DNA of 63,328 nt, filler included, from Guillardia theta CCMP2712 (taxonomy: Eukaryota > Protista > Cryptophyta): the NCBI RefSeq assembly GCF_000315625.1. It is 6 parts of 6 records of this genome, joined end to end, with 100 filler letters (N's around TTAATTAATTAA, not from the genome) between each part and the next. Parts side by side here need not be neighbours in the genome. Positions count along the whole stretch, not along the records: positions 1 to 25,875 come from NW_005434568.1; 5 more parts are not named here. The stretch is one strand, 5' to 3'. A program made the translations under genes and the position numbers. Shown one piece after another: positions 18,867 to 60,000 of the stretch. The first letter of the stretch is position 1, and every line of letters begins with the position of its first letter. The notes under the pieces were generated by a model. It saw only the letters and a list, made by a program, of their open reading frames with translations. It was not told the origin of the DNA and did not search any database.

Positions 18867-21256
18867 ATGCTGGGAGGTTCAGGGAGGCGGCTGGTGCTGC
18901 TGCTGCTGCCTCTGCTTCCTCTTCCTCCACACCAGGGCCCCTCAGCTAGCCCGATGAGGATGACGATGAGGATGACGATGACGAGCTCGAAGGCCCTTCT
19001 CTCCCGCCCTTCTAGTCAGTCTCCTCTACGATGTGTCCGTAGCAGGTCGGAGATGCTGGGGTCAGGTACAGCAGCATTGGCGGATTCGCTGCTTCCTTTG
19101 AGAATCTGCGAAGTTTCTTCTGGCATGCCATCAGTTGTCTTGAATGGCTCGTGCTCTCTTGATCTGACCGACCTCAAGGCCCTTCCCTTGACTGACAGCT
19201 TCCAACAAGACCCCTCTAAACATTTGGATTTGTGCGCAAATGTTGTAAAGTTCCAGCGAGGATCTGGAGAATCAAGCAAGATGGATCGACAAGACACAAG
19301 CATTGATGTTCTGAACCGCTTCTCCTTGAGATTCTTGGCCAAGCCGCTCCGTGGTTATGGCAGACCAGGTTCGTTCGATTTACTAGATTGTTGAGATGTT
19401 GAACTTTCGATCTCACAGATAGAAGCAGACCAAGAGCAAGAAAGACTTGGAAGCCTCAGAAGTCATCGCAACAATCAGAACCTGCTCGACGGGCTCGACC
19501 GGATCGATGGGGAGATTTCAAGGAAGATCGAACCGAAGTCAAAGATGAAAAAACACTGAGGACTGAGGTCAACGTAGCTCTGTACGGCCGGCGGTATCTG
19601 AGGAAGGACTTCACATTCCCAGAGTACAGCCCTTCAGAAGTGCAAGAGATCGATGTGAATCTTGACAGGACGACGGTGCGTGTCGACGGCAAGTTTGACA
19701 GGACGGTGGTATTACAGAACGTTGTAAAAGCCAACCACAGCCTAATTAGAGACTTCTTCTCCAAGGCCGGATTGATCGAGTCGATTGTGGAGAGGAGGAA
19801 TGCTACTGCTGTCATCTTTCAGGATGATGAATCAGCATTCAAAGCCGGTCAGATGGACATGCTGCCGCTTGCTCACGGGTTGAAGATGAGTCGGGTAGTT
19901 CCGGGCAACCTGCAAGCAGAGGAAAGGAGAAGACTGGAGAGAGGGTCTCGCAAGCCTGCAGTGTCCTCCTTGGACTCCAAGGGCTCTAAGTCATTGCAGC
20001 GAATGGGGAGAGGAGAGGACGGAACGAAGACAACGGGAGTCGTGAAGGGGCGGGAGGCGTCGACGGAAGGTGCGGAGGCGAGGACGAGAAGGAGGAGCGG
20101 TGTGCTTGGAAGGGAAAGTATAGAAAGTAGGGAGGAAAGGAGTAGACTTATGCAAAAGAAGGTGGAGAGGAGGACAGCAGACAAGGGAAGAAGAACGGTA
20201 CAGGGGATGACAGGGAGGGCAGGATTAGCTGCCAGGAAGGGAGGGAGGTGGGGAGAGGCGCGAGGTAGGAGAGGAGGTGCACTGGGGGCACGGGGGAGGA
20301 GTGAGGGAGTGCAGGGGAGAGGAGGGAGGATAAGAGTAGCAGGACAGAAGAGGATGACAACAACGGGAAGAGGAGAGAGGGGTAGAGTGCAGGCAAGGGG
20401 TGAGAGGAAGGGAGGAGGGCAGTCGAGGGGCGAGAGGAGGGGAGGTGAGCGGGGACAGCGAGTGAAGGGCCCGGTTGGACGACTAAGAGGAGGAGGAGGA
20501 TCTTCCAGTGAAAAGGAATCATCACGACACAGACGAGGGCGCAAGAGATCGAGAAAGTCCCCGAGAGAGGAGCAGCTGTCTTCCGCAGAAGAAGGAGGAG
20601 CTTCAGGGTCCGAAGTTCTTCCTGTCGACGAGGACGAGAGCGTCAGTACCCTTGTCTTTAGCAGCGACATGGCCAGTGATGAGATGAGGAAGCGGGTGAA
20701 CGAGCATGACAAGGCCAAGGAGCGGGAGAGGACGGGGAGGATGACGGAGGATGAGAGAGCGAAGGAGCTGCTGGGGTATCTCCACGGACACATGCACGAG
20801 AAAGCCAAGGAGCTCAAGATCCGGGGAATCTCAGCGGATGCGGAAAGGATGAGGAGGCTGTTCGGGGAAGGGAAACACCAGGAGTCTGTTCAGTTCTCCC
20901 GTGACTCATCCCCGGTAGCCTGGAGAGTGGACGGGGATAAGCGCTACCCCGTCTATCCTGGCTACGAAGACTTTGATCCTTACATTGGGCCCAACGGTCT
21001 GCAGGAGCTGATCAATCGAGAGGGGATCGACTACACCTTCGACGAGGGGAGCACGAGCGCGGACAACAGCGACGTCGAGCTGATGGACCTGCTGAGAGGA
21101 ATCAACCACTCGGAGGCCCCCAAGAGGAGGACACTTGCTCGGGGCTGGCCAATGTCTGCTATCAATGACACGCGACCTATTGGGACCCGTTGGGTCGACA
21201 CCAACACGAGGTTCGCTGATAACTTCAAGTTCCAAAAGAACTCCAAGAAGTACTAG
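18867..21256 (+). CDS. Hypothetical protein with a hydrophobic N-terminus, a degenerate RRM-like region and an RG-rich tract
   Basis: ORF 18867 joins the 19640-21256 frame via a ~48-nt GT-AG intron (~19370-19417). RTVVLQNV...LIRDFFSKAGLIESI...ATAVIFQDDESAFKA resembles an RRM. Confidence 0.6.
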
Positions 21257-21914
21257 TACCATACTATGAAACGACGTGAGAAGACTCGCCAAACGGGCGC
21301 TAGTTACTATCAGCACACCATGAACTGACAGCAACAATCTTATTAGTGAATTGTTTTTTTAACTTGTGACGGCGAAATGCCCCCGCCGTGCCACTGGGCC
21401 AACCTCAAACCGTCTGAGCCACTGAAGTAACTAGTAACTTGTAACTTGCCAGACTCACGGTGAATCATCATACTGCCAGTGAGTGTCTGCTACCGCAGCC
21501 ATAACTTGCCGCAGTGCCTGTCACTGACTGTAGAGCCTTTCGAACTTCCGACCGGTGATTCAGTGATTCACCGTGCACAGCGACTCAACCGTTGAAAACG
21601 CGGGCCTGCCCATTTAGACGCCGGAGAGTTCAAACCCGCAGTTCACCCCTCATTCAACGGTCGGAGTCTCCCGGAGTCAACGGGCCCCCGGCTGACTCCG
21701 CGAGCGCCGTTCTCCGGGCTGAGCGCACACTGCCGGGCCCCGCCAACTTCTCGGAAGTTCCGACCGGCTCCGAGGCTCCGGCGTCGGGGCCCCGGGCCCC
21801 GACGCCGGGCCCGGCTAGGCTCTGAGCACCGGCGTGCCAGGTGACTCACTCCCGGCAGGCCGCCAAAGGTTCTTTTTACTTTTACAGGAAAAAAAATCGG
21901 CCCAGCAAAACCGC

Positions 21915-23726
21915 ATGTGCTCCCATGCTGGAGGGTGCGGGGGAGGCGGAGAGTGTGGCAGCGGCAGCGGGGGAGGAGGAGGAGGAGGATCAAGAAGAGG
22001 ACAAGGAATCGATGAAGGTGGGATGAAGCCCGTGTCATGAGGATCTCTGGGGATGCTCTAATGGAGGGCGCATGCATCCCTCGCTTATTCTTCTTCAAGC
22101 TTGTTCAGTGCCTACCTGCCTCCTTGATGCAGCCTGACGCAGCCTTGTCACTGACACCCGTCGATCTCAGAGTTCTCAAGCATCTCCCTCCAACCATCGT
22201 CGAACCTCTGCTTGAAATGTCAGGCTCCTGCAAAGTGCAAGTGAGCAAATGATCTTGCACTGCAACGCTTTTCATGTCTTGTCAGTCCTCGAGGAGAACT
22301 ACTTTGTTGGCCATGCCTGTCGAAGTCGCTGAACAGGTCAGTATGTATCCACCTTCTGATTCTTGATCCCTCATGTTGTCAACCCCGTCGCTACAAGTCA
22401 CTCGACATGTCAGGGGCATTCGCAATCAGTTCAGCCGAGCCCGGTGCTCTTCTCCCCAAGAGAGGTGACAACAAGCACAATTGAGCACGTCCTTCCTCCC
22501 TCCTTCGCCTCCTCTCCTCCTTATCCTCTCTCCTCTCTCCTCTCCTCTCCTCTCGCTCCTCCCTCCCCTCACCTCTCTCCTCTCTCCTCTCCTCTCTCCT
22601 TTCCTTTCTCTCCTATCCTCTCTCCTCTTCTCGCTCCTCTCCGATCTTTTTCTTTCTCTCACCTTATCTCCTTAGATTCCTTGTTGCGTTCTCGGGAGGA
22701 GCACATTCATTAGCCCTTGCTCTGCTCCTGCGCCAATGTCTTCAAGGTATCTGCGCTGCCCCACCCTGCCCTGCCCTGCTCTGCCCTGCCCTGCCCTGCT
22801 CTGCTCTGCTCTGCTCTGCTCTGCTCTGCTCTGCTCTGCTTTTCTTTCACCTCAACTCGGTTGTTCGCAGATCTTCGAGGAAGAAAGTTTGAAGTTCATT
22901 TGGCGCACGTGGATCAGACCGATGCATGTGGAATGAGCGAGGAGGAGGGCAAGGTGAGAGGACATGGCGACGGTGGAGCTGGTGCTGAGTTGCTAGAGTG
23001 AAGGAGAGGAGAGGGGCAGAGGAGAAGGAGAGAAGAAGCAGAGGAGAGGAGAGGAGGGGAGGGGAGAGGAGAGGGATAGAGGAGAGGAGAGGAGGAGGGG
23101 GAGAGGGAGGGGAGAGGATATAGGAGAGGAGGGGAGGAGGAGAAGGAGAGGGGAGAGGAGGGGAGGTGGAGGAGGGGAGGAGAGGGGAGGGGAGGAGAGG
23201 ATATGAACGTCTTTACATCAACAGGAATTCATCAGCAAGGTTGAGGATCTAGCTAGTCGGACGGGCTTCTCTCTCTCAGTCCTGAAGCTTCCTGGTTGAT
23301 GTCGCACGTCTCGCCTCCTCTCCTGACCTGCTGCAAGACATGACAAGCGGAGTGCTACGAAAGAAGCTGAGGGAGTTTGAGGAGAAGCCAACACTGTTGA
23401 GGTGAGAGGAGGGGAGAGAGGAGGAGAGAGGAGAGGGGGGAGGGGGAGAGAGAAGAAACGAAACGAAGCAAGGATGGACCAGAGTGAGAGCAGGAGGAGC
23501 AGGAGGAGCAGGAGGAGCAGGAGGAGCAGGAGGAGCAGGAGGAGCAGGAGGAGCAGGAGGATGGCGATGCAGATCATGACGGTGATACGATTTTCGTTGC
23601 AGCACGGGGGAAATGACAGCGACCAAGTGGGAGGATCTGTTGGCGCGTAAAAGGATGGAGGTCCTGTGCGACTTTGCAAGGTGACAAATGAAACGAGGAG
23701 GAGGAGGAGGAGGAGGAGGAGGAGAA

Positions 23727-23795
<69 letters not shown>

Positions 23796-24516
23796 ACAGC
23801 AGCAGAACAGCAGCAGGAGAATGCAGCATGAGCAGCAGGAGCAGGAGCAGGAGCAGCAGCAACGAGGGTATAACCGTTGACGAGAGTTGTAGCACAAACG
23901 GGCACACGCGACTAGCGTTGGGAGACAGCGCGACGAGGCTGGCGACGCATGTGATTGCGGAGACAGCGAAGGTGAGAAAGGGAAGGGGAGGAGGGCAATG
24001 AAGAGAAGAGAGGAAAGGGGAGAGGAGAGTTTTGTTGGGAGGAAAGGGCAGGGAAGGGGAGGACAAGGGAGGGTAAGGGAGCGGAGCGGAGCGGAGGACA
24101 GGAGAGGGGAAGAAGATCTGAAGGAGGGAGCAGGGCAGGTCAATCAACTCAAGGAGGCTGAAGTTGACGTCCTCGATCAAGGTAAGGATGCAACATGATG
24201 TTTGATCTCCTTCCTTTCCTTCCTGTCAGAGATGCTCTCCCTGCTCTCCCTCCTCTGCTCCTCTTTTTGCCGACCGTTTCTTGCCTCCACCACCAACTCC
24301 TCCTCGTCCTCCTCGTCCTCCTCGTCCTCCTCGTCCTCCTCGTCCTCCTCGTCCTCCTCGTCCTCCTCAACTTACTCGATGCCTCCTCCGCACCTCTTCC
24401 TCTCTCTTCCTCTTTCTGAGAGGACGGAGCAGCATCAAGGACGTTCCATCAGTCTCGTCCGACCAGGTTGCGACTTTCTCTCGGAGGAAATTTTCTTCTT
24501 CCTTCATGTAGAGCAA
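21915..24516 (+). CDS. CTU2: Cytoplasmic tRNA 2-thiolation protein 2 (CTU2/Ncs2); C-terminus lost in the gap
   Basis: Phase-consistent splicing gives MCSHAGGCG...LCLKCQAPAKCNPRGELLCWPCLSKSL...RFLVAFSGGAHSLAL...VHLAHVD...TATKWEDLL...GHTRLALGDSATRLATHVIAETAK...LVRPGCDFLSEEI. These are the CxxC pairs, degenerate PP-loop, GDSxTRLA and RPxxD motifs of CTU2. Confidence 0.85.
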
Positions 24517-24728
24517 GTTTCTCCGGTGATTCTTCACTCCTCTCTTCTCTTCTTCACTTGAACTCACNNNNNNNNNNNNNNNNNNNNNNNNNNNNNNNNN
24601 NNNNNNNNNNNNNNNNNNNNNNNNNNNNNNNNNNNNNNNNNNNNNNNNNNNNNNNNNNNNNNNNNNNGAGAGAGAGAGGAGGAGGAGGGGGGGGGGGGGG
24701 ACGACAAAAATGTCTCAAGGAGCTGCAG

Positions 24729-25817
24729 GTTCAGTATGACCTTCCTCTGAAGATTCTTTCCTATCAAGACCTCTATGGTTGGTCAATGGACTCAATCGGT
24801 AAGCTTTCCCTGCTCCGCTCCTCCTCCTCAGCTCTTCTCGCTCCTCCCTCCCTCTTGTTTAGTACGCCTCCCTTCTCTTCCCCTCCTCCAACCTTGTATA
24901 TTCCCCCCTCCCTCCCCCCCACCCCTCCCTCCCTTCTCTCCCGACTTCTCCTCTCTCTCTACTCCTTTCACTCCCACTCCCTCTCTTCTCCCTCCTCCCT
25001 TCTCCTCTAACGTTTCTTTCTCCTCCAGTCTCGCACATTGGAAGGAAAGGCAACTGCACGTTCTGCGGAGTTTTCAGACGGCAGGTGAAGAAGAAGAGAG
25101 AAATTCAAAAAGGAGAGCAGAAATGAGATGAGGGAGGAGTATGAGAGGAAGGAGGAGAGAGGAGGGAGAAATCTGAGAGGAGGGAGGAGAGAGAAGCTGA
25201 CTTGAGACGCCCGTGCAGGCGCTTGACCGAGGAGCAAGCATCCTCGAGGCAGACAAGATAGTGACAGGACACAATGCCGACGACATCGCGGAGACGGTGA
25301 GGGAGAGTGCGAGAAGGGGAGGAGCCAGGAAAGGAGAGGAGGAGGAGCAGGAGGAGGAGCAGGAGGAGCAGGAGGAGGAGCAGCGTCGTACTGATGCCCT
25401 CGCAGGTTCTTCTCAATATCCTCAGAGGAGACGTTCCTCGTCTGCAGCGATGTACTCAGGTGAAGCAAGAGGAAGCATGCTGCTGCTGAGCCTCCTCCTC
25501 CTCAGATCTCAACGGGTATGGACGGCAATCTCCCTCGCAGCAAGCCGTTCAAGCATGCATACGAAAAGGAGATCGTCATGTGAGAGCTCGTTCTCCACTT
25601 CTTCCCCCTTGCCTCCTCCTCCGCCTCCTCTTCCACCACCTTGCCCTCCTCCCTCGCTCTCTCTCCCTCTTCCTCCCTCTTCCCCTCCCTCCCTCCCTCC
25701 CTCCCTCCTCTCCCGGCCTGCTCTACTCTTTCCTTGCTGACACTTGGGCAGGTATGCTCATTTCAAGAAGCTTGACTACTTCTCTACTGAGTGCATCTAT
25801 TCCCCCAACGCCTACAG
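24729..25817 (+). CDS. CTU1: Cytoplasmic tRNA 2-thiolation protein 1 (CTU1/Ncs6); both termini in gaps
   Basis: Exons splice to [112 protein letters not shown], which is diagnostic CTU1 sequence. Confidence 0.95.
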
Positions 25818-26394
25818 GTTGCCTACCTCCTGCCCTCTCCCTCCCTCCCTCTCCCTCCCTCTCTCCCTCTCTGCCNNNNNNNNNNNNNNNNNNNNNNNNN
25901 NNNNNNNNNNNNNNNNNNNTTAATTAATTAANNNNNNNNNNNNNNNNNNNNNNNNNNNNNNNNNNNNNNNNNNNNCGAGCATGGACGAGAGGAGCAAGAG
26001 GACGAACAGGAGCGAGGGAGGAAGGAGGAGGATATTGAAGGCGTCGGAGAGACGAGAAAAGGAGAAGACACTGAACAAAACACACAAGTTAAGAATCATA
26101 TCCATCCCCCTTCCTCCCTCTCTCCTCCTCTCTCCCTCCTCTTCCACTTCTTTTTCCCTCTACTCTTCTCCCTCTCCTATGCTCTTCTCTGCCCGTCTCT
26201 TCCTTCTCCTCCCTCACCAGTATTTTGCGCATTTCGCCTTATATCCCACCCCTTACTTCAAAGTACCGGTCCAATTTCCCATTACCACCCACCTTTTTCC
26301 AACCCAAGATAGTAGCTGATGAAAAGACCCTGCAGATCCCTCAGATATCTGCAGAACCTCTCGACTAGCAGCTGCTACACTGCGAGAAACATCA

Positions 26395-57056: not shown

Positions 57057-60000
57057 CCAGTAGCTCCGGCAGTCTCTCATGTGTAAGGCTAGCCACCAGT
57101 AGCTCTGTGACATCAACACGTCCCTCGATCGCAGTCTCCTGGGAGTTGCTGATTTGATCCTACTCAAAGCTGACGATCAAGAGACTTGAAATAACAGTCA
57201 GACTCGGAATCGACTAGTACCTCCCAGTGTTTTCCGGCAACTTCATGTCCGGTCCGCAGTGTAGCTGATGTCCGACCGACCAATCTGGCTGGAGAGAGGC
57301 TTGTTGTTCCTAGAGTGCATCCGAAGATGGATCAAACAGATTGTGGCTGGGATACTCGTGATAGGGCTGACTTGAAACAACTTGCGGCTAGAGAGGGAGC
57401 CTGATTGAAGAGAAGAGTCATCCGAATGTGTGTAACGAGACTTGATGGAATTGCACGAGTTTGCAGCAGAAACGAAAAAACACCAACAAACAGAAACTGC
57501 AGAAAACATTATGACTGACCAGACATGAGATCAACATGGTTGGGCATGTATACGAGGCTTGTGACTCCTGGGTCATGACGGATCGAAATCAAGCTTGTTG
57601 CAAGTGGACCGACGTTGTGTGACGCACGGAAGTCTCGAGTCTGATTTTGAAATCAGACCCGAGAATTTCAGAGTCTTTGAGACTTTTTGAAACTCATTCC
57701 AGTGTCACACAACTCCGCAAGCTCCGAGCGACTGTGTGCAAGAGCCGCCGCTTCGTAAACAGTCCTCCGAGTGTACCGGCAGACACTCGCCAACCTACTT
57801 GGCTCAACGCCGAGGACCGAGCTCAGGAGTACCCGTAGTCAGGTCAGACTGTTAGGCTAGATAGCACCCGGGTGTGTAGACAGGTCATAGGCTACTAGGA
57901 TGTCTCGCGAGATCTTCTCTGGCAAGGGATGGAGTGAGACCGGGTTACCCGTTAATGAAAGTTGGCGTGTATGGACTATGGTGGAGGGGTGGCTTCGGCC
58001 CTGTGGTGGGGGAGGGGGTGGTGCTGAGGAATGGATCTGGTCTTGTGCTGACCGCTGACGTGGCTATCAAAGACCACCATCAGAAGCATGACGACTGAGT
58101 CACTCTCTTTCCTCTCTCATGGACGCGATTCCAACCCCCCCGATGTGTTCATCCATCCTCCCCTTGGACAAGACAAGGTCTCCAACCTCTTCCTCCTGAA
58201 TGCCGGTTTTCGCTGCCTCCATCGTTTCCTAGTATTTTATTGAGGCGGGTTTGTTGGCTCTATCCTCCCCCTCCTTTGTTTGCTCCGGTTTGTCCTTCTT
58301 TTTCAGTCAATAATTGAATGATCACTTGCTTTCCCNNNNNNNNNNNNNNNNNNNNNNNNNNNNNNNNNNNNNNNNNNNNNNNNNNNNNNNNNNNNNNNNN
58401 NNNNNNNNNNNNNNNNNNNNNNNNNNNNNNNNNNNNNNNNNNNNNNNNNNCACAGGTATTCAGTTAACACAAGAGGACCAACACCTTCTTCCACTCTTCC
58501 GTGTGAGACGCTGTCATCGGTTACCTGACGCCGCGCGTCGACCCGAGACGAAGAGACAAGTTGGTTCGTGCCGAGCATCGTTTGTCCCAAGAGTCATCGT
58601 GTGCTGATCAGAGGATCTCAGCTGCTCCCGGCTCTGATCTCATTACTGCTCCTTGGGTCACTGAGCACTCGCTCACACAATGTATAACTCAAGATCTTGA
58701 ATGTTTGATCGATCAGAGTTCGTTTCACTCTACTGCGTCTCACAACATTCAGTAACGAGGAGAACAGTCACATAGGCTAGTGTAGCCGTTCTCTTTGGTT
58801 GCCGGGTCAGTTAACCCCACGTCTCTTGGTACTAACTTTAGTCTATTTCAAACCTAAATTCAGTTGAGTCAAGAAGGAAAAGTCAGGTGGGCAATTTGGT
58901 CAAATGAGTCAAATGATATATGGCTGCAGTAGTACTATAGTAGGCCTCTTGTCTTGCATGTCGGGTTGTGCTGGAGGAGCTGAGAGACACCCAGAGGTCT
59001 TGCTCACGGGGGGGCGATGAGGCGGAGGAGCTGAGAGCATGTGGTCATGAAGCTGGCCGGGCTGTAGTGACGTCTAGTCATCATGGATGGAGATGAAGCT
59101 TGTTGCTAGGGGATCACTCGAGCGCTCTTAGACGCATGACCGTGACACGAGCAGCCTCGGTGAAGCCTCCAGCTGACAACCCTTGGTCTTGACCCCTCCC
59201 AGGTCTGCTCCGAGGCCCTCGCCAGCTGACCCCTGGACTCAAGGGTGGATCGAGCTCAGGAGTACCGGTAGTCAGCCGAGACTATCAGAGCTCATACAGC
59301 ACCCCCGGGCCCGGGCCCGGCGGCCCGGGGTCACAGTGTAGTCAGATCGGACGGTGTAGATAGAGCAGTGAGCTTGTAGGCTGGCTCGCGAGGCTGCTCT
59401 GAGCAAGAGGCTCAGTGAGACGGCGGGGAGGTATGGCGATGTGGAGACGAGGAGGAGAGTCAGTCCGGGTTCTTGGCCACACGGCCCTCGACCTTCGCAG
59501 TAGATGACTGAGTTAGTCAATCCTCTCAACGGTTTTCATCGTCAGCAGTCCGCCTCGGATCCGTTGCTCATTCAGCGTCCACCCCTTACGCTGACTAGGG
59601 GAAACCTGGGGCTTCTGGGGGTGGGGTAGGGCAGTGCAAAATACATCAACAGGTGGGGTAGGCTGGTGTCGCTCACCCGTACCTGATAGGCGGAAACCAT
59701 GGGATTGAAGAGGGTGGTATACGACTAGGGTAGGGATCCATGTAGAGGGGTGGTTGGGCGGGAAACATGGCAGGAGGATGAAGGGGAGAGCGGGAGGAGA
59801 GAGGGAGAGAGGATGGAAGGAGCTTGAGGGAGGGTGACGACAAGCTTGTCTTGTCGCTCGTGTGTGAGAGATGTCTTGTAACTGCTGCAGAGAGAAAGAG
59901 AAGAGGAGAAGAGGAGAGGAGAGGAGAGGAGAAGATAGAAGAGGATAGGATAGAAGAGGAGAGAATAGGAGAGGAGAACAGAGGAGAGAAGTTTAGTGAA

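What the first reader, a model, noticed from the sequence alone, without database searches (positions are those of the whole stretch)
21915..25817. CTU2 runs straight into CTU1: possible single-chain tRNA thiouridylase fusion or a two-gene cluster
Seen: spliced CTU2 exons (21915-24516) and CTU1 exons (24729-25817) are on the same strand, separated only by intron-like sequence and a 100-N gap. No stop codon, ATG or promoter-type block is visible between them. Established: CTU1/Ncs6 and CTU2/Ncs2 form the heterodimer that makes s2U34 on cytosolic tRNA-Lys/Glu/Gln and are unlinked in yeast and humans. Inference: chance adjacency of obligate partners is unlikely, so this is either a CTU2-CTU1 fusion protein or a co-regulated tandem pair. 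The gap must hold the CTU2 C-terminus and the CTU1 N-terminus (CxxC pairs, SGGKDS), so it is larger than 100 nt.
Basis: partly seen in the sequence, partly recalled or inferred. Interest (0 to 1): 0.8.

Follow-up and report, generated by a model that had tools for sequence, protein, structure and literature searches.

The report
Single-chain CTU2-CTU1 tRNA thiolase gene
In the cryptophyte alga Guillardia theta, the two subunits of the enzyme that adds sulfur to the wobble uridine of cytosolic tRNAs are encoded by one gene and one mRNA as a single 680-residue protein, and the 100-N assembly gap hides 552 coding bases of it.

Summary
The genome matches Guillardia theta in size and scaffold count.

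- **One mRNA.** RNA contigs from two separate studies, and a 2114-nt JGI contig, run through every CTU2 exon (21915-24525) and every CTU1 exon (24729-25817).
- **The gap.** These contigs carry 552 coding bases that are absent from the whole assembly. They sit where the 100-N gap is, so the scaffold join is correct and the gap is undersized.
- **One ORF.** The mRNA has a single 680-codon reading frame with no stop between the halves.
  - The N-terminal half is CTU2-like: an N-terminal zinc finger, a degenerate PP-loop, no Fe-S cysteines, and no C-terminal zinc finger.
  - A linker of about 30 mostly acidic residues follows.
  - The C-terminal half is a complete CTU1 with all catalytic motifs.
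- **Only copy.** No other CTU1 or CTU2 locus was found in the assembly.
- **Relatives.** The same truncated fusion occurs as one ORF on DNA contigs of two unnamed relatives. A fuller version that keeps the CTU2 C-terminal cysteine pairs occurs in two other uncultured marine protists.
- **Folding.** A complex model pairs the two halves (score 0.83, best control 0.00).

No paper in the searched library describes this fusion. I rate it a new variant of a known enzyme, of moderate interest.

The parts
21915..22017 (+). Exon 1 with the start codon (ATG 21915). It encodes a Cys/Gly-rich N-terminus.
   Evidence: The X1 RNA contig starts at 21914. This is the first in-frame ATG after an upstream stop. 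L018 maps at 100% identity.
22171..22464 (+). Exons 2-4 (22171-22240, 22286-22336, 22414-22464). They encode the CTU2 N-terminal zinc finger, CLKC...CWPC.
   Evidence: Exact transcript mapping with GT..AG introns; joints seen in X1 and X7.
22676..22953 (+). Exons 5-6 (22676-22746, 22871-22953). They encode the degenerate PP-loop SGGAHS of the CTU2 half.
   Evidence: Weak PF01171 match over the CTU2 half, 22 bits.
23225..24181 (+). Exons 7-11 (23225-23294, 23338-23401, 23603-23680, 23893-23971, 24134-24181). They encode the CTU2 core, including GDSATRLA.
24433..24525 (+). Exon 12, the last CTU2 exon before the gap. It ends in phase 0 with a GTGA donor at 24526.
24568..24667 (.). Assembly gap written as 100 N. 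It hides at least 552 nt of coding sequence (L018:812-1363, residues 288-471) plus an unknown amount of intron. The hidden part covers the end of the CTU2 half, the acidic linker, the CTU1 N-terminal zinc finger and the PP-loop SGGKDS.
   Evidence: 547 letters between 24527 and 24726 in the X1 and X7 contigs. L018 is unaligned over 814-1360. The stretch is absent from all of G000.
24729..25817 (+). CTU1 exons 24729-24798, 25029-25084, 25219-25296, 25406-25459, 25506-25579 and 25752-25817. They encode CTFC, GHNADD and STEC (the Fe-S cysteines). The gene continues beyond the piece at about G000:C106:59029-59080 and 59243-59423, where the stop lies.
   Evidence: PF01171 at 74.9 bits and PF16503 at 47.1 bits. 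PF16503 zinc-ribbon hit at C106:59310-59390.

Best explanation
Window 21915-25817, together with two more exons about 3.2 kb downstream, is one gene of the Guillardia theta nuclear genome. It is transcribed into one mRNA of about 2.2 kb with one 680-codon ORF.

The protein is a natural head-to-tail fusion of the two subunits of the cytosolic tRNA 2-thiouridylase.
- Residues 1 to about 335 are CTU2/Ncs2-like. They carry an N-terminal CxxC...CxxC zinc finger and a degenerate PP-loop, SGGAHS. They have no Fe-S cysteines, and the canonical C-terminal zinc finger is lost.
- Residues about 336-366 are a mostly acidic linker.
- Residues 367-680 are a complete CTU1/Ncs6. They carry both zinc fingers, the PP-loop SGGKDS, and the three cysteines (CTFC and STEC) that hold the [4Fe-4S] cluster in NcsA.

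Inferred mechanism: the two halves fold back on each other into the NcsA-like pseudo-dimer proposed for Ctu1/Ctu2. The CTU1 half adenylates C2 of U34 and transfers sulfur delivered by Urm1 thiocarboxylate through the Fe-S cluster. The CTU2 half acts as a non-catalytic partner that positions tRNA-Lys, tRNA-Glu and tRNA-Gln. Fusion fixes a 1:1 ratio and co-folding.

Shown here: the gene structure, the single mRNA contig, the single ORF, the motifs, the absence of other copies in the assembly, and conservation in relatives. Inferred: the protein stays in one piece, the two halves pair within one chain, and the enzyme is active.
For: 1. One RNA contig (X1: 2179 nt, depth 30; X7: 2109 nt, depth 293; different studies and years) covers exons from 21914 to at least 25579, with 547 extra letters at the gap.
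2. JGI contig L018 maps exon by exon at 100% identity. One frame is open from its first base to the stop at 1991-1993. With the genomic exon 1 this gives 680 aa.
3. Pfam on the ORF gives CTU2 37.9 bits (cut-off 27.9), ATP_bind_3 74.9 bits and zn-ribbon_14 47.1 bits. NCBIfam's best match is NcsA over residues 352-652. PDB's best match is NcsA 6scy at 1e-39.
4. A protein search of the whole assembly hits only C106. The gap sequence occurs nowhere else.
5. Relatives carry the same architecture in one ORF on DNA contigs. L032/P0291 ends at a GT donor right after KRNQ, the position where the G. theta transcript resumes after the gap. L033/P0292 is the second case.
6. More distant fusions exist: P0140/P0281 (intronless ORF on a TARA metagenome scaffold) and P0137.
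7. G. theta has Leu-Leu where relatives keep the ancestral CTU1 Met before the first Cys.
8. The complex model of the two halves scored ipSAE 0.83 against 0.00 for the best of 3 controls. That mark was reached by 51 of 78 solved complexes and 2 of 108 mismatched pairs. Runs agreed in at least 86% of contacts and partner pLDDT was at least 81. The interface uses equivalent helices of both halves.
Against: No protein-level evidence exists. Contigs cannot show transcript ends, so an additional internal start giving a CTU1-only mRNA is not excluded. An in-frame Met lies 18 residues before the first CTU1 cysteine. The raw-read run X20 gave almost no coverage of the locus. The linker could be cleaved after translation. 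The complex pass may reflect the model's memory of solved NcsA and TtuA dimers. AlphaFold2 on the whole chain with a 6-row alignment was poor (pLDDT 55.6, pTM 0.38), so it says nothing about whether the linker fits. L018 may derive from the same raw data as X7. Urm1 was not detected in the assembly, though that search has low power on short exons.
Confidence: 0.87

Rival explanations
1. These are two adjacent genes. The joint RNA contig would be a read-through (conjoined) transcript or an assembler chimera. The cell would make separate CTU2 and CTU1 proteins from their own mRNAs or by internal initiation.
For: Contigs across two genes do not prove one transcript (caveat). An in-frame Met sits in the linker. 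Relatives keep a Met directly before the first CTU1 cysteine.
Against: The ORF is continuous and in frame across the junction. Only about 30 residues separate the domains, with no stop. G. theta lacks the ancestral Met. The same single ORF is present on DNA contigs of relatives. The join is identical in X1 and X7, which come from different studies.
Confidence: 0.07
2. The fusion protein is made but cut in the acidic linker. The working enzyme would then be an ordinary two-chain heterodimer, and the fusion would serve only co-expression.
For: The linker is predicted to be disordered (pLDDT under 50 over 247-348). It also varies greatly in length among relatives, from about 30 to about 150 residues.
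Against: Nothing direct. No recognisable protease site was looked for or seen. Variable linkers are also typical of stable fusions.
Confidence: 0.05
3. This is a scaffold mis-join or collapsed repeat, so that CTU2 and CTU1 are not truly adjacent.
For: The gap is flanked by low-complexity CT/GA-rich introns. The 100 N looks like a placeholder.
Against: The transcript crosses the gap in the same order, orientation and frame. Nothing else in the assembly carries the missing piece. Relatives have both halves on one contig.
Confidence: 0.01

Closest known systems
Ctu1/Ctu2 (yeast Ncs6/Ncs2), the cytosolic tRNA 2-thiouridylase heterodimer of eukaryotes
   Same: Both partners are recognisably present. 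The CTU1 half has the PP-loop, three Fe-S cysteines and two zinc fingers. The CTU2 half matches PF10288 above its cut-off, has a degenerate PP-loop and has no Fe-S cysteines. The modelled pairing uses equivalent helices of both halves, as in the AlphaFold model of human Ctu1/Ctu2 described in PMC10067955.
   Different: Here both partners are one polypeptide from one gene, in the order CTU2 then CTU1. The CTU2 half lacks the C-terminal zinc-finger region: only profile positions 1-52 of 110 of PF10288 match. According to PMC10067955, human Ctu2 keeps its zinc-finger sites.
Archaeal NcsA, a [4Fe-4S]-dependent U34 thiolase homodimer (PDB 6scy)
   Same: It is the best solved match to residues 352-651 (1e-39). 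It is also the best NCBIfam match (191.9 bits). It has the same motifs.
   Different: NcsA works as a homodimer of two active subunits. Here the second 'subunit' is a diverged, inactive paralogue covalently linked upstream. The NcsA equivalog cut-off of 500 bits is not reached.
Unnamed marine protist fusions P0281/P0140 (844 and 760 aa) and P0137 (639 aa)
   Same: They have the same order, CTU2 then CTU1, in one ORF.
   Different: They keep the CTU2 C-terminal CxxC pairs. Their CTU1 parts form a separate starred clade (SH-aLRT 98). The G. theta CTU1 sits with the stand-alone Palpitomonas CTU1 (SH-aLRT 88). A single origin of all fusions is not rejected (p-AU 0.465).

Membership tests
CTU1 / Ncs6 / NcsA (PP-loop U34 thiolase) | PP-loop ATP-binding motif SGGKDS and a PF01171 match | tested here: met
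   SGGKDS at residues 422-427. PF01171 scores 74.9 bits against a cut-off of 27.
CTU1 / Ncs6 / NcsA (PP-loop U34 thiolase) | Three conserved cysteines that hold the [4Fe-4S] cluster (CxxC plus one Cys) | tested here: met
   CTFC at 504-507 and the Cys of STEC at 596. The first of these, C504 (C487 in L018 numbering), is listed as nearly invariant in alignment A2. Their role is taken from PMC10067955. Cluster binding itself was not tested.
CTU1 / Ncs6 / NcsA (PP-loop U34 thiolase) | N-terminal and C-terminal zinc fingers; the C-terminal one matches PF16503 | tested here: met
   CEIC...CKTC at 369-392 and CERC...CKAC at 646-661. PF16503 scores 47.1 bits against a cut-off of 34.9. All eight Cys are nearly invariant in A2.
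CTU1 / Ncs6 / NcsA (PP-loop U34 thiolase) | s2U34 formation on tRNA-Lys, tRNA-Glu and tRNA-Gln | not testable with these tools
   Needs genetics or biochemistry.
CTU2 / Ncs2 | PF10288 match above the gathering score | tested here: met
   37.9 bits against a cut-off of 27.9 on the whole ORF, but only profile positions 1-52 of 110 in the CTU2 half.
CTU2 / Ncs2 | Diverged PP-loop fold without the Fe-S cysteines (non-catalytic paralogue) | tested here: met
   SGGAHS at 98-103. There is no CxxC upstream of GDSATR. SSRW stands where CTU1 has STEC.
CTU2 / Ncs2 | C-terminal zinc-finger cysteine pairs | tested here: not met
   After LRTVQKL only the acidic linker, with a single Cys, follows before CTU1. 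The pairs are present in P0281/P0140 and P0137. The G. theta half is therefore a truncated CTU2.
CTU2 / Ncs2 | Physical pairing with CTU1 | tested here: inconclusive
   In silico only: ipSAE 0.83 against 0.00 for the best control. The pass may come from the model's memory of solved NcsA/TtuA dimers. Needs biochemistry.

The most novel reading that the evidence does not exclude
Cryptophytes rely solely on an obligate single-chain Ctu2-Ctu1 thiouridylase in which the CTU2 C-terminal zinc finger has been dispensed with. The same head-to-tail fusion exists in at least two other uncultured marine protist lineages, either from one old event or arising repeatedly. This would be natural evidence that the working unit is a 1:1 NcsA-like pseudo-dimer. 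It would also offer a naturally linked construct for the first structure and in vitro reconstitution of the eukaryotic enzyme, which has resisted recombinant production as two chains (PMC10067955).
Probability: 0.6. Interest if true: 0.6.

Novelty: new variant of a known kind. Interest (0 to 1): 0.5.

Why it matters
Ctu1/Ctu2 is conserved across eukaryotes and is linked to stress responses, disease and thermotolerance. According to PMC10067955, the recombinant complex has not been obtained, Ctu2 is insoluble alone, and the stoichiometry is unconfirmed.

A natural fusion is 'Rosetta stone' evidence for a 1:1 pair with CTU2's C-terminal end near CTU1's N-terminus. It shows that the CTU2 C-terminal zinc finger is dispensable in at least one lineage. 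It also offers a ready single-chain construct for expression, Fe-S reconstitution and structure work.

For the genome itself, this corrects the locus. It is one gene, and 552 coding bases are missing from the reference assembly.

Tried and rejected
- Pfam on single exon pieces failed because of a frame error.
- PF10288 hits on other scaffolds (C6, C76, C13) were below the cut-off, and the protein search did not confirm them. The PF01171 hits on C51, C75 and C171 are other PP-loop proteins, not CTU1.
- A length-restricted search for long CTU1-containing proteins (657-2090 aa) found only unrelated merges such as ubiquitin, Obg-type GTPase and glycosyltransferase. It found no CTU2 fusion.
- The region 1-420 search was swamped by low-complexity words: 33 of 8000 candidates passed. 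It is therefore not a census of fusions.
- The protein Atlas gave family names but no fused cluster and no taxon for P0140. The second Atlas call failed.
- AlphaFold2 on the full chain with a 6-row alignment gave pLDDT 55.6 and pTM 0.38, which is uninformative. A 32-row alignment (A2) misaligned the CTU2 halves and was not used for folding.
- Urm1 (PF09138) was not found in the assembly. The search has low power because exons are 50-95 nt, so this is not taken as absence.
- The raw-read RNA run X20 laid only 81 reads, nearly all on repeats, so it gives no transcript ends.
- The joints 21989->25614, and others at GGAGGA-type repeats, are repeat artefacts.
- Literature searches for a described CTU1-CTU2 or Ncs6-Ncs2 fusion found nothing relevant.
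- The taxa of P0137 and of P0140/P0281 could not be named.
Full report
**Identity of the genome.** The window is G000:C106:29996-55926 on a 257 kb scaffold of an assembly of 87,145,349 bases in 669 contigs. Table 1 of PMC6260743 gives 87.1 Mb and 669 scaffolds for Guillardia theta, with a mean intron of 106 nt and a mode of 47 nt. I therefore take the genome to be the G. theta nuclear assembly. The introns found here (43-271 nt, several of 43-46 nt) fit that.

**Checking the observation.** Stop-to-stop translation of 21800-25875 shows short CTU2-like pieces up to about 24525 and CTU1-like pieces from about 24729 to 25817. All are on the + strand, around the N run at 24568-24667. The piece ends at 25875 because a second, 3118-N gap follows (C106:55871-58988). 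Beyond it lie the last two CTU1 exons, the PF16503 zinc ribbon (C106:59310-59390, 53 bits) and the stop codon.

**RNA evidence.**
- Eleven runs that the tool guesses to be RNA (library not on record), from five studies, hold 0.07-0.18 of the stretch's words (0.15-0.18 in ten of them), about what spliced exons would give.
- One contig in X1 (2179 nt, depth 30.5, 2018) and one in X7 (2109 nt, depth 293, 2014, another study) cover the locus from 21914 to at least 25579. They show every intron as a GT..AG joint.
- At the gap both contigs show a joint from 24527 to 24726 with 547 letters between.
- Frame arithmetic from the ATG at 21915 put 24726 at a codon start in the CTU1 frame.

**The transcript sequence.**
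- A word search using a CTU1 exon, padded by the N run to widen the length filter, found P0059. It is 544 aa and carries PF10288, PF01171 and PF16503.
- Its contig L018 (2114 nt, JGI sample 3300017164) maps at 100% identity to every exon on both sides of both gaps.
- One frame of L018 is open from base 2 to the stop at 1991-1993. P0059 is only an internal-Met call, because the contig lacks the first 17 codons.
- With genomic exon 1, the ORF is 680 aa.
- After allowing for splice-site overlap, exon 12 ends at 24525 (GTGA donor) and the next mapped exon starts at 24729 (CAG acceptor), both in phase 0.
- L018:812-1363 (552 nt, residues 288-471) is therefore missing from the assembly. A DNA search of all of G000 finds it nowhere.
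- The second gap lies wholly inside an intron. No transcript letters are missing there.

**What the protein is.**
- Pfam on the ORF gives PF10288 CTU2 at 37.9 bits (cut-off 27.9; profile positions 1-52 of 110). It gives PF01171 at 74.9 bits and PF16503 at 47.1 bits.
- The CTU1 half (367-680) has CEIC...CKTC, SGGKDS, CTFC, GHNADD, STEC and CERC...CKAC. [quoted passage not shown]
- Its best solved match is NcsA 6scy at 1e-39. Its best NCBIfam match is NcsA at 191.9 bits, below the equivalog cut-off, as expected for a eukaryote.
- The CTU2 half has CLKC...CWPC, SGGAHS and GDSATR, and no Fe-S cysteines. SSRW aligns where CTU1 has STEC.
- After LRTVQKL come only about 30 mostly acidic residues before the first CTU1 cysteine. 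The CTU2 C-terminal zinc finger is therefore absent.
- A protein search of the whole assembly with the fusion hits only C106, so this appears to be the only CTU1 and CTU2 in the assembly.

**Relatives.**
- HMMER against 1.84 billion representatives listed two other fusions among the best 150 hits. One is P0140 (760 aa; cluster mates P0281 at 844 aa and P0283 at 767 aa). The other is P0137 (639 aa).
- Pfam confirms CTU2, ATP_bind_3 and zn-ribbon_14 in both.
- P0140 is an intronless ORF on a TARA metagenome scaffold of 68% GC. P0137 is on a JGI contig with an upstream in-frame stop. Both keep the CTU2 C-terminal CxxC pairs.
- Closer relatives of G. theta are about 45% identical in the CTU2 half and 76% in the CTU1 N-terminus. 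They show the truncated type.
  - L032/P0291 (Logan) has the CTU2 half, an Ala-rich linker of about 150 residues and 105 residues of CTU1 in one ORF. It ends at a GT donor directly after KRNQ, the same position as the G. theta intron.
  - L033/P0292 is similar.
  - L029/P0257 is a genomic contig cut by introns in the linker.
- These relatives keep a Met just before the first CTU1 cysteine, probably the relic start codon. G. theta has Leu-Leu there.
- Palpitomonas bilix CTU1 (P0049) is a stand-alone 359-aa protein.
- In a CTU1 tree, the G. theta half sits with Palpitomonas and P0054 (SH-aLRT 88). P0137 with P0281/P0283 forms a separate starred clade (98).
- The AU test does not reject one clade of all fusions (p 0.465). 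One origin versus two is therefore open.

**How it probably works.**
- PMC10067955 proposes that Ctu1/Ctu2 is a heterodimer mimicking the NcsA homodimer. It also notes that the recombinant complex and its stoichiometry are still lacking.
- A complex model of the two halves scored ipSAE 0.83 against 0.00 for the best of 3 controls. That mark was reached by 51 of 78 solved complexes and 2 of 108 mismatched pairs. Runs agreed in at least 86% of contacts and partner pLDDT was at least 81.
- The interface pairs the helix after GDSATR with the helix after GHNADD. It also pairs SLNSLSRRF...LRTVQKL with FAREFLKDL...IIRSGEM. These are equivalent elements, so the arrangement is a pseudo-twofold dimer.
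- This supports pairing within one chain but does not show it, and the pass may come from the model's memory of solved NcsA/TtuA dimers.
- AlphaFold2 on the whole chain with six aligned rows was too poor to use.

**Novelty.** Five literature searches found no description of a natural CTU1-CTU2 fusion. The library lacks most subscription journals, and domain-architecture databases could not be queried. 'Undescribed' is therefore probable, not certain.

**Verdict.** This is a real feature. Interest is 0.5: it is useful to the tRNA-modification field and corrects the reference locus, but fusion of obligate partners is a familiar evolutionary pattern.

Noticed in passing
G000:C106:55871-58988 (just beyond window 25875; L004:872-3989): A 3118-N gap lies entirely inside the intron between the exon ending at 25817 and the next exon. 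No transcript letters are missing there. That would make the intron 3216 nt, in a genome whose mean intron is 106 nt. Either the gap size is overestimated or something else, such as a repeat or mobile element, sits there.
   Followed up: partly
window 23398-23689, also 21965-21990: RNA-contig depth jumps to thousands (3629 in X1, 42388 in X7) over (GGAGCA)n / (GGA)n intron repeats. Many loose ends and false joints start here. These are repeats shared with many other transcripts, not expression of this locus.
   Followed up: partly
window 22500-22660, 22750-22850, 23690-23840, 24290-24370, 24800-25020: The introns are largely microsatellite-like low complexity: (CTC)n, (CTGCC/CTGCT)n, (CAG)n, (CCTCGT)n. 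The strand bias flips between CT-rich and GA-rich from one intron to the next. The gap at 24568 is flanked by such sequence, which probably caused the assembly break.
   Followed up: no
window 19640-21256 (+): A 538-aa open frame with no Pfam match sits directly upstream of the fusion gene. The region is strongly purine-rich (GC skew 0.44, AT skew 0.41). Whether it is coding is unknown.
   Followed up: partly
L004:4081-4245 (G000:C106 about 59080-59244): The last intron cannot be placed with a canonical GT..AG without a one-base conflict (GT..GG or GG..AG). This is either a non-canonical site or a single-base error in the assembly or transcript.
   Followed up: partly
P0054 (433 aa, JGI, unnamed): The closest relative of the G. 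theta CTU1 half (72% identity over the tree's aligned columns; 74%) is a CTU1 fused at its C-terminus to an RRM domain (PF00076). This is a different, also undescribed-looking, CTU1 architecture. Its N-terminus is cut off, so an upstream CTU2 half cannot be excluded.
   Followed up: no
P0004, P0006, P0007, P0009 (Mortierella/Linnemannia, 899-960 aa): These NCBI models join CTU1 to an Obg-type GTPase (PF01018, PF01926) in several Mortierellaceae. This is either a lineage-specific fusion or a recurring gene-model merge.
   Followed up: no
P0132 (Gongylonema pulchrum, 396 aa): The top-scoring representative hit carries a tandem duplication of the CTU1 N-terminal 130 residues. This is most likely an assembly or gene-model artefact.
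   Followed up: no
L031 (P0137): This fusion ORF has an upstream in-frame stop and starts inside the CTU2 fold, lacking the N-terminal zinc finger and PP-loop region. It may be an alternative or incompletely spliced transcript of an unnamed protist.
   Followed up: partly
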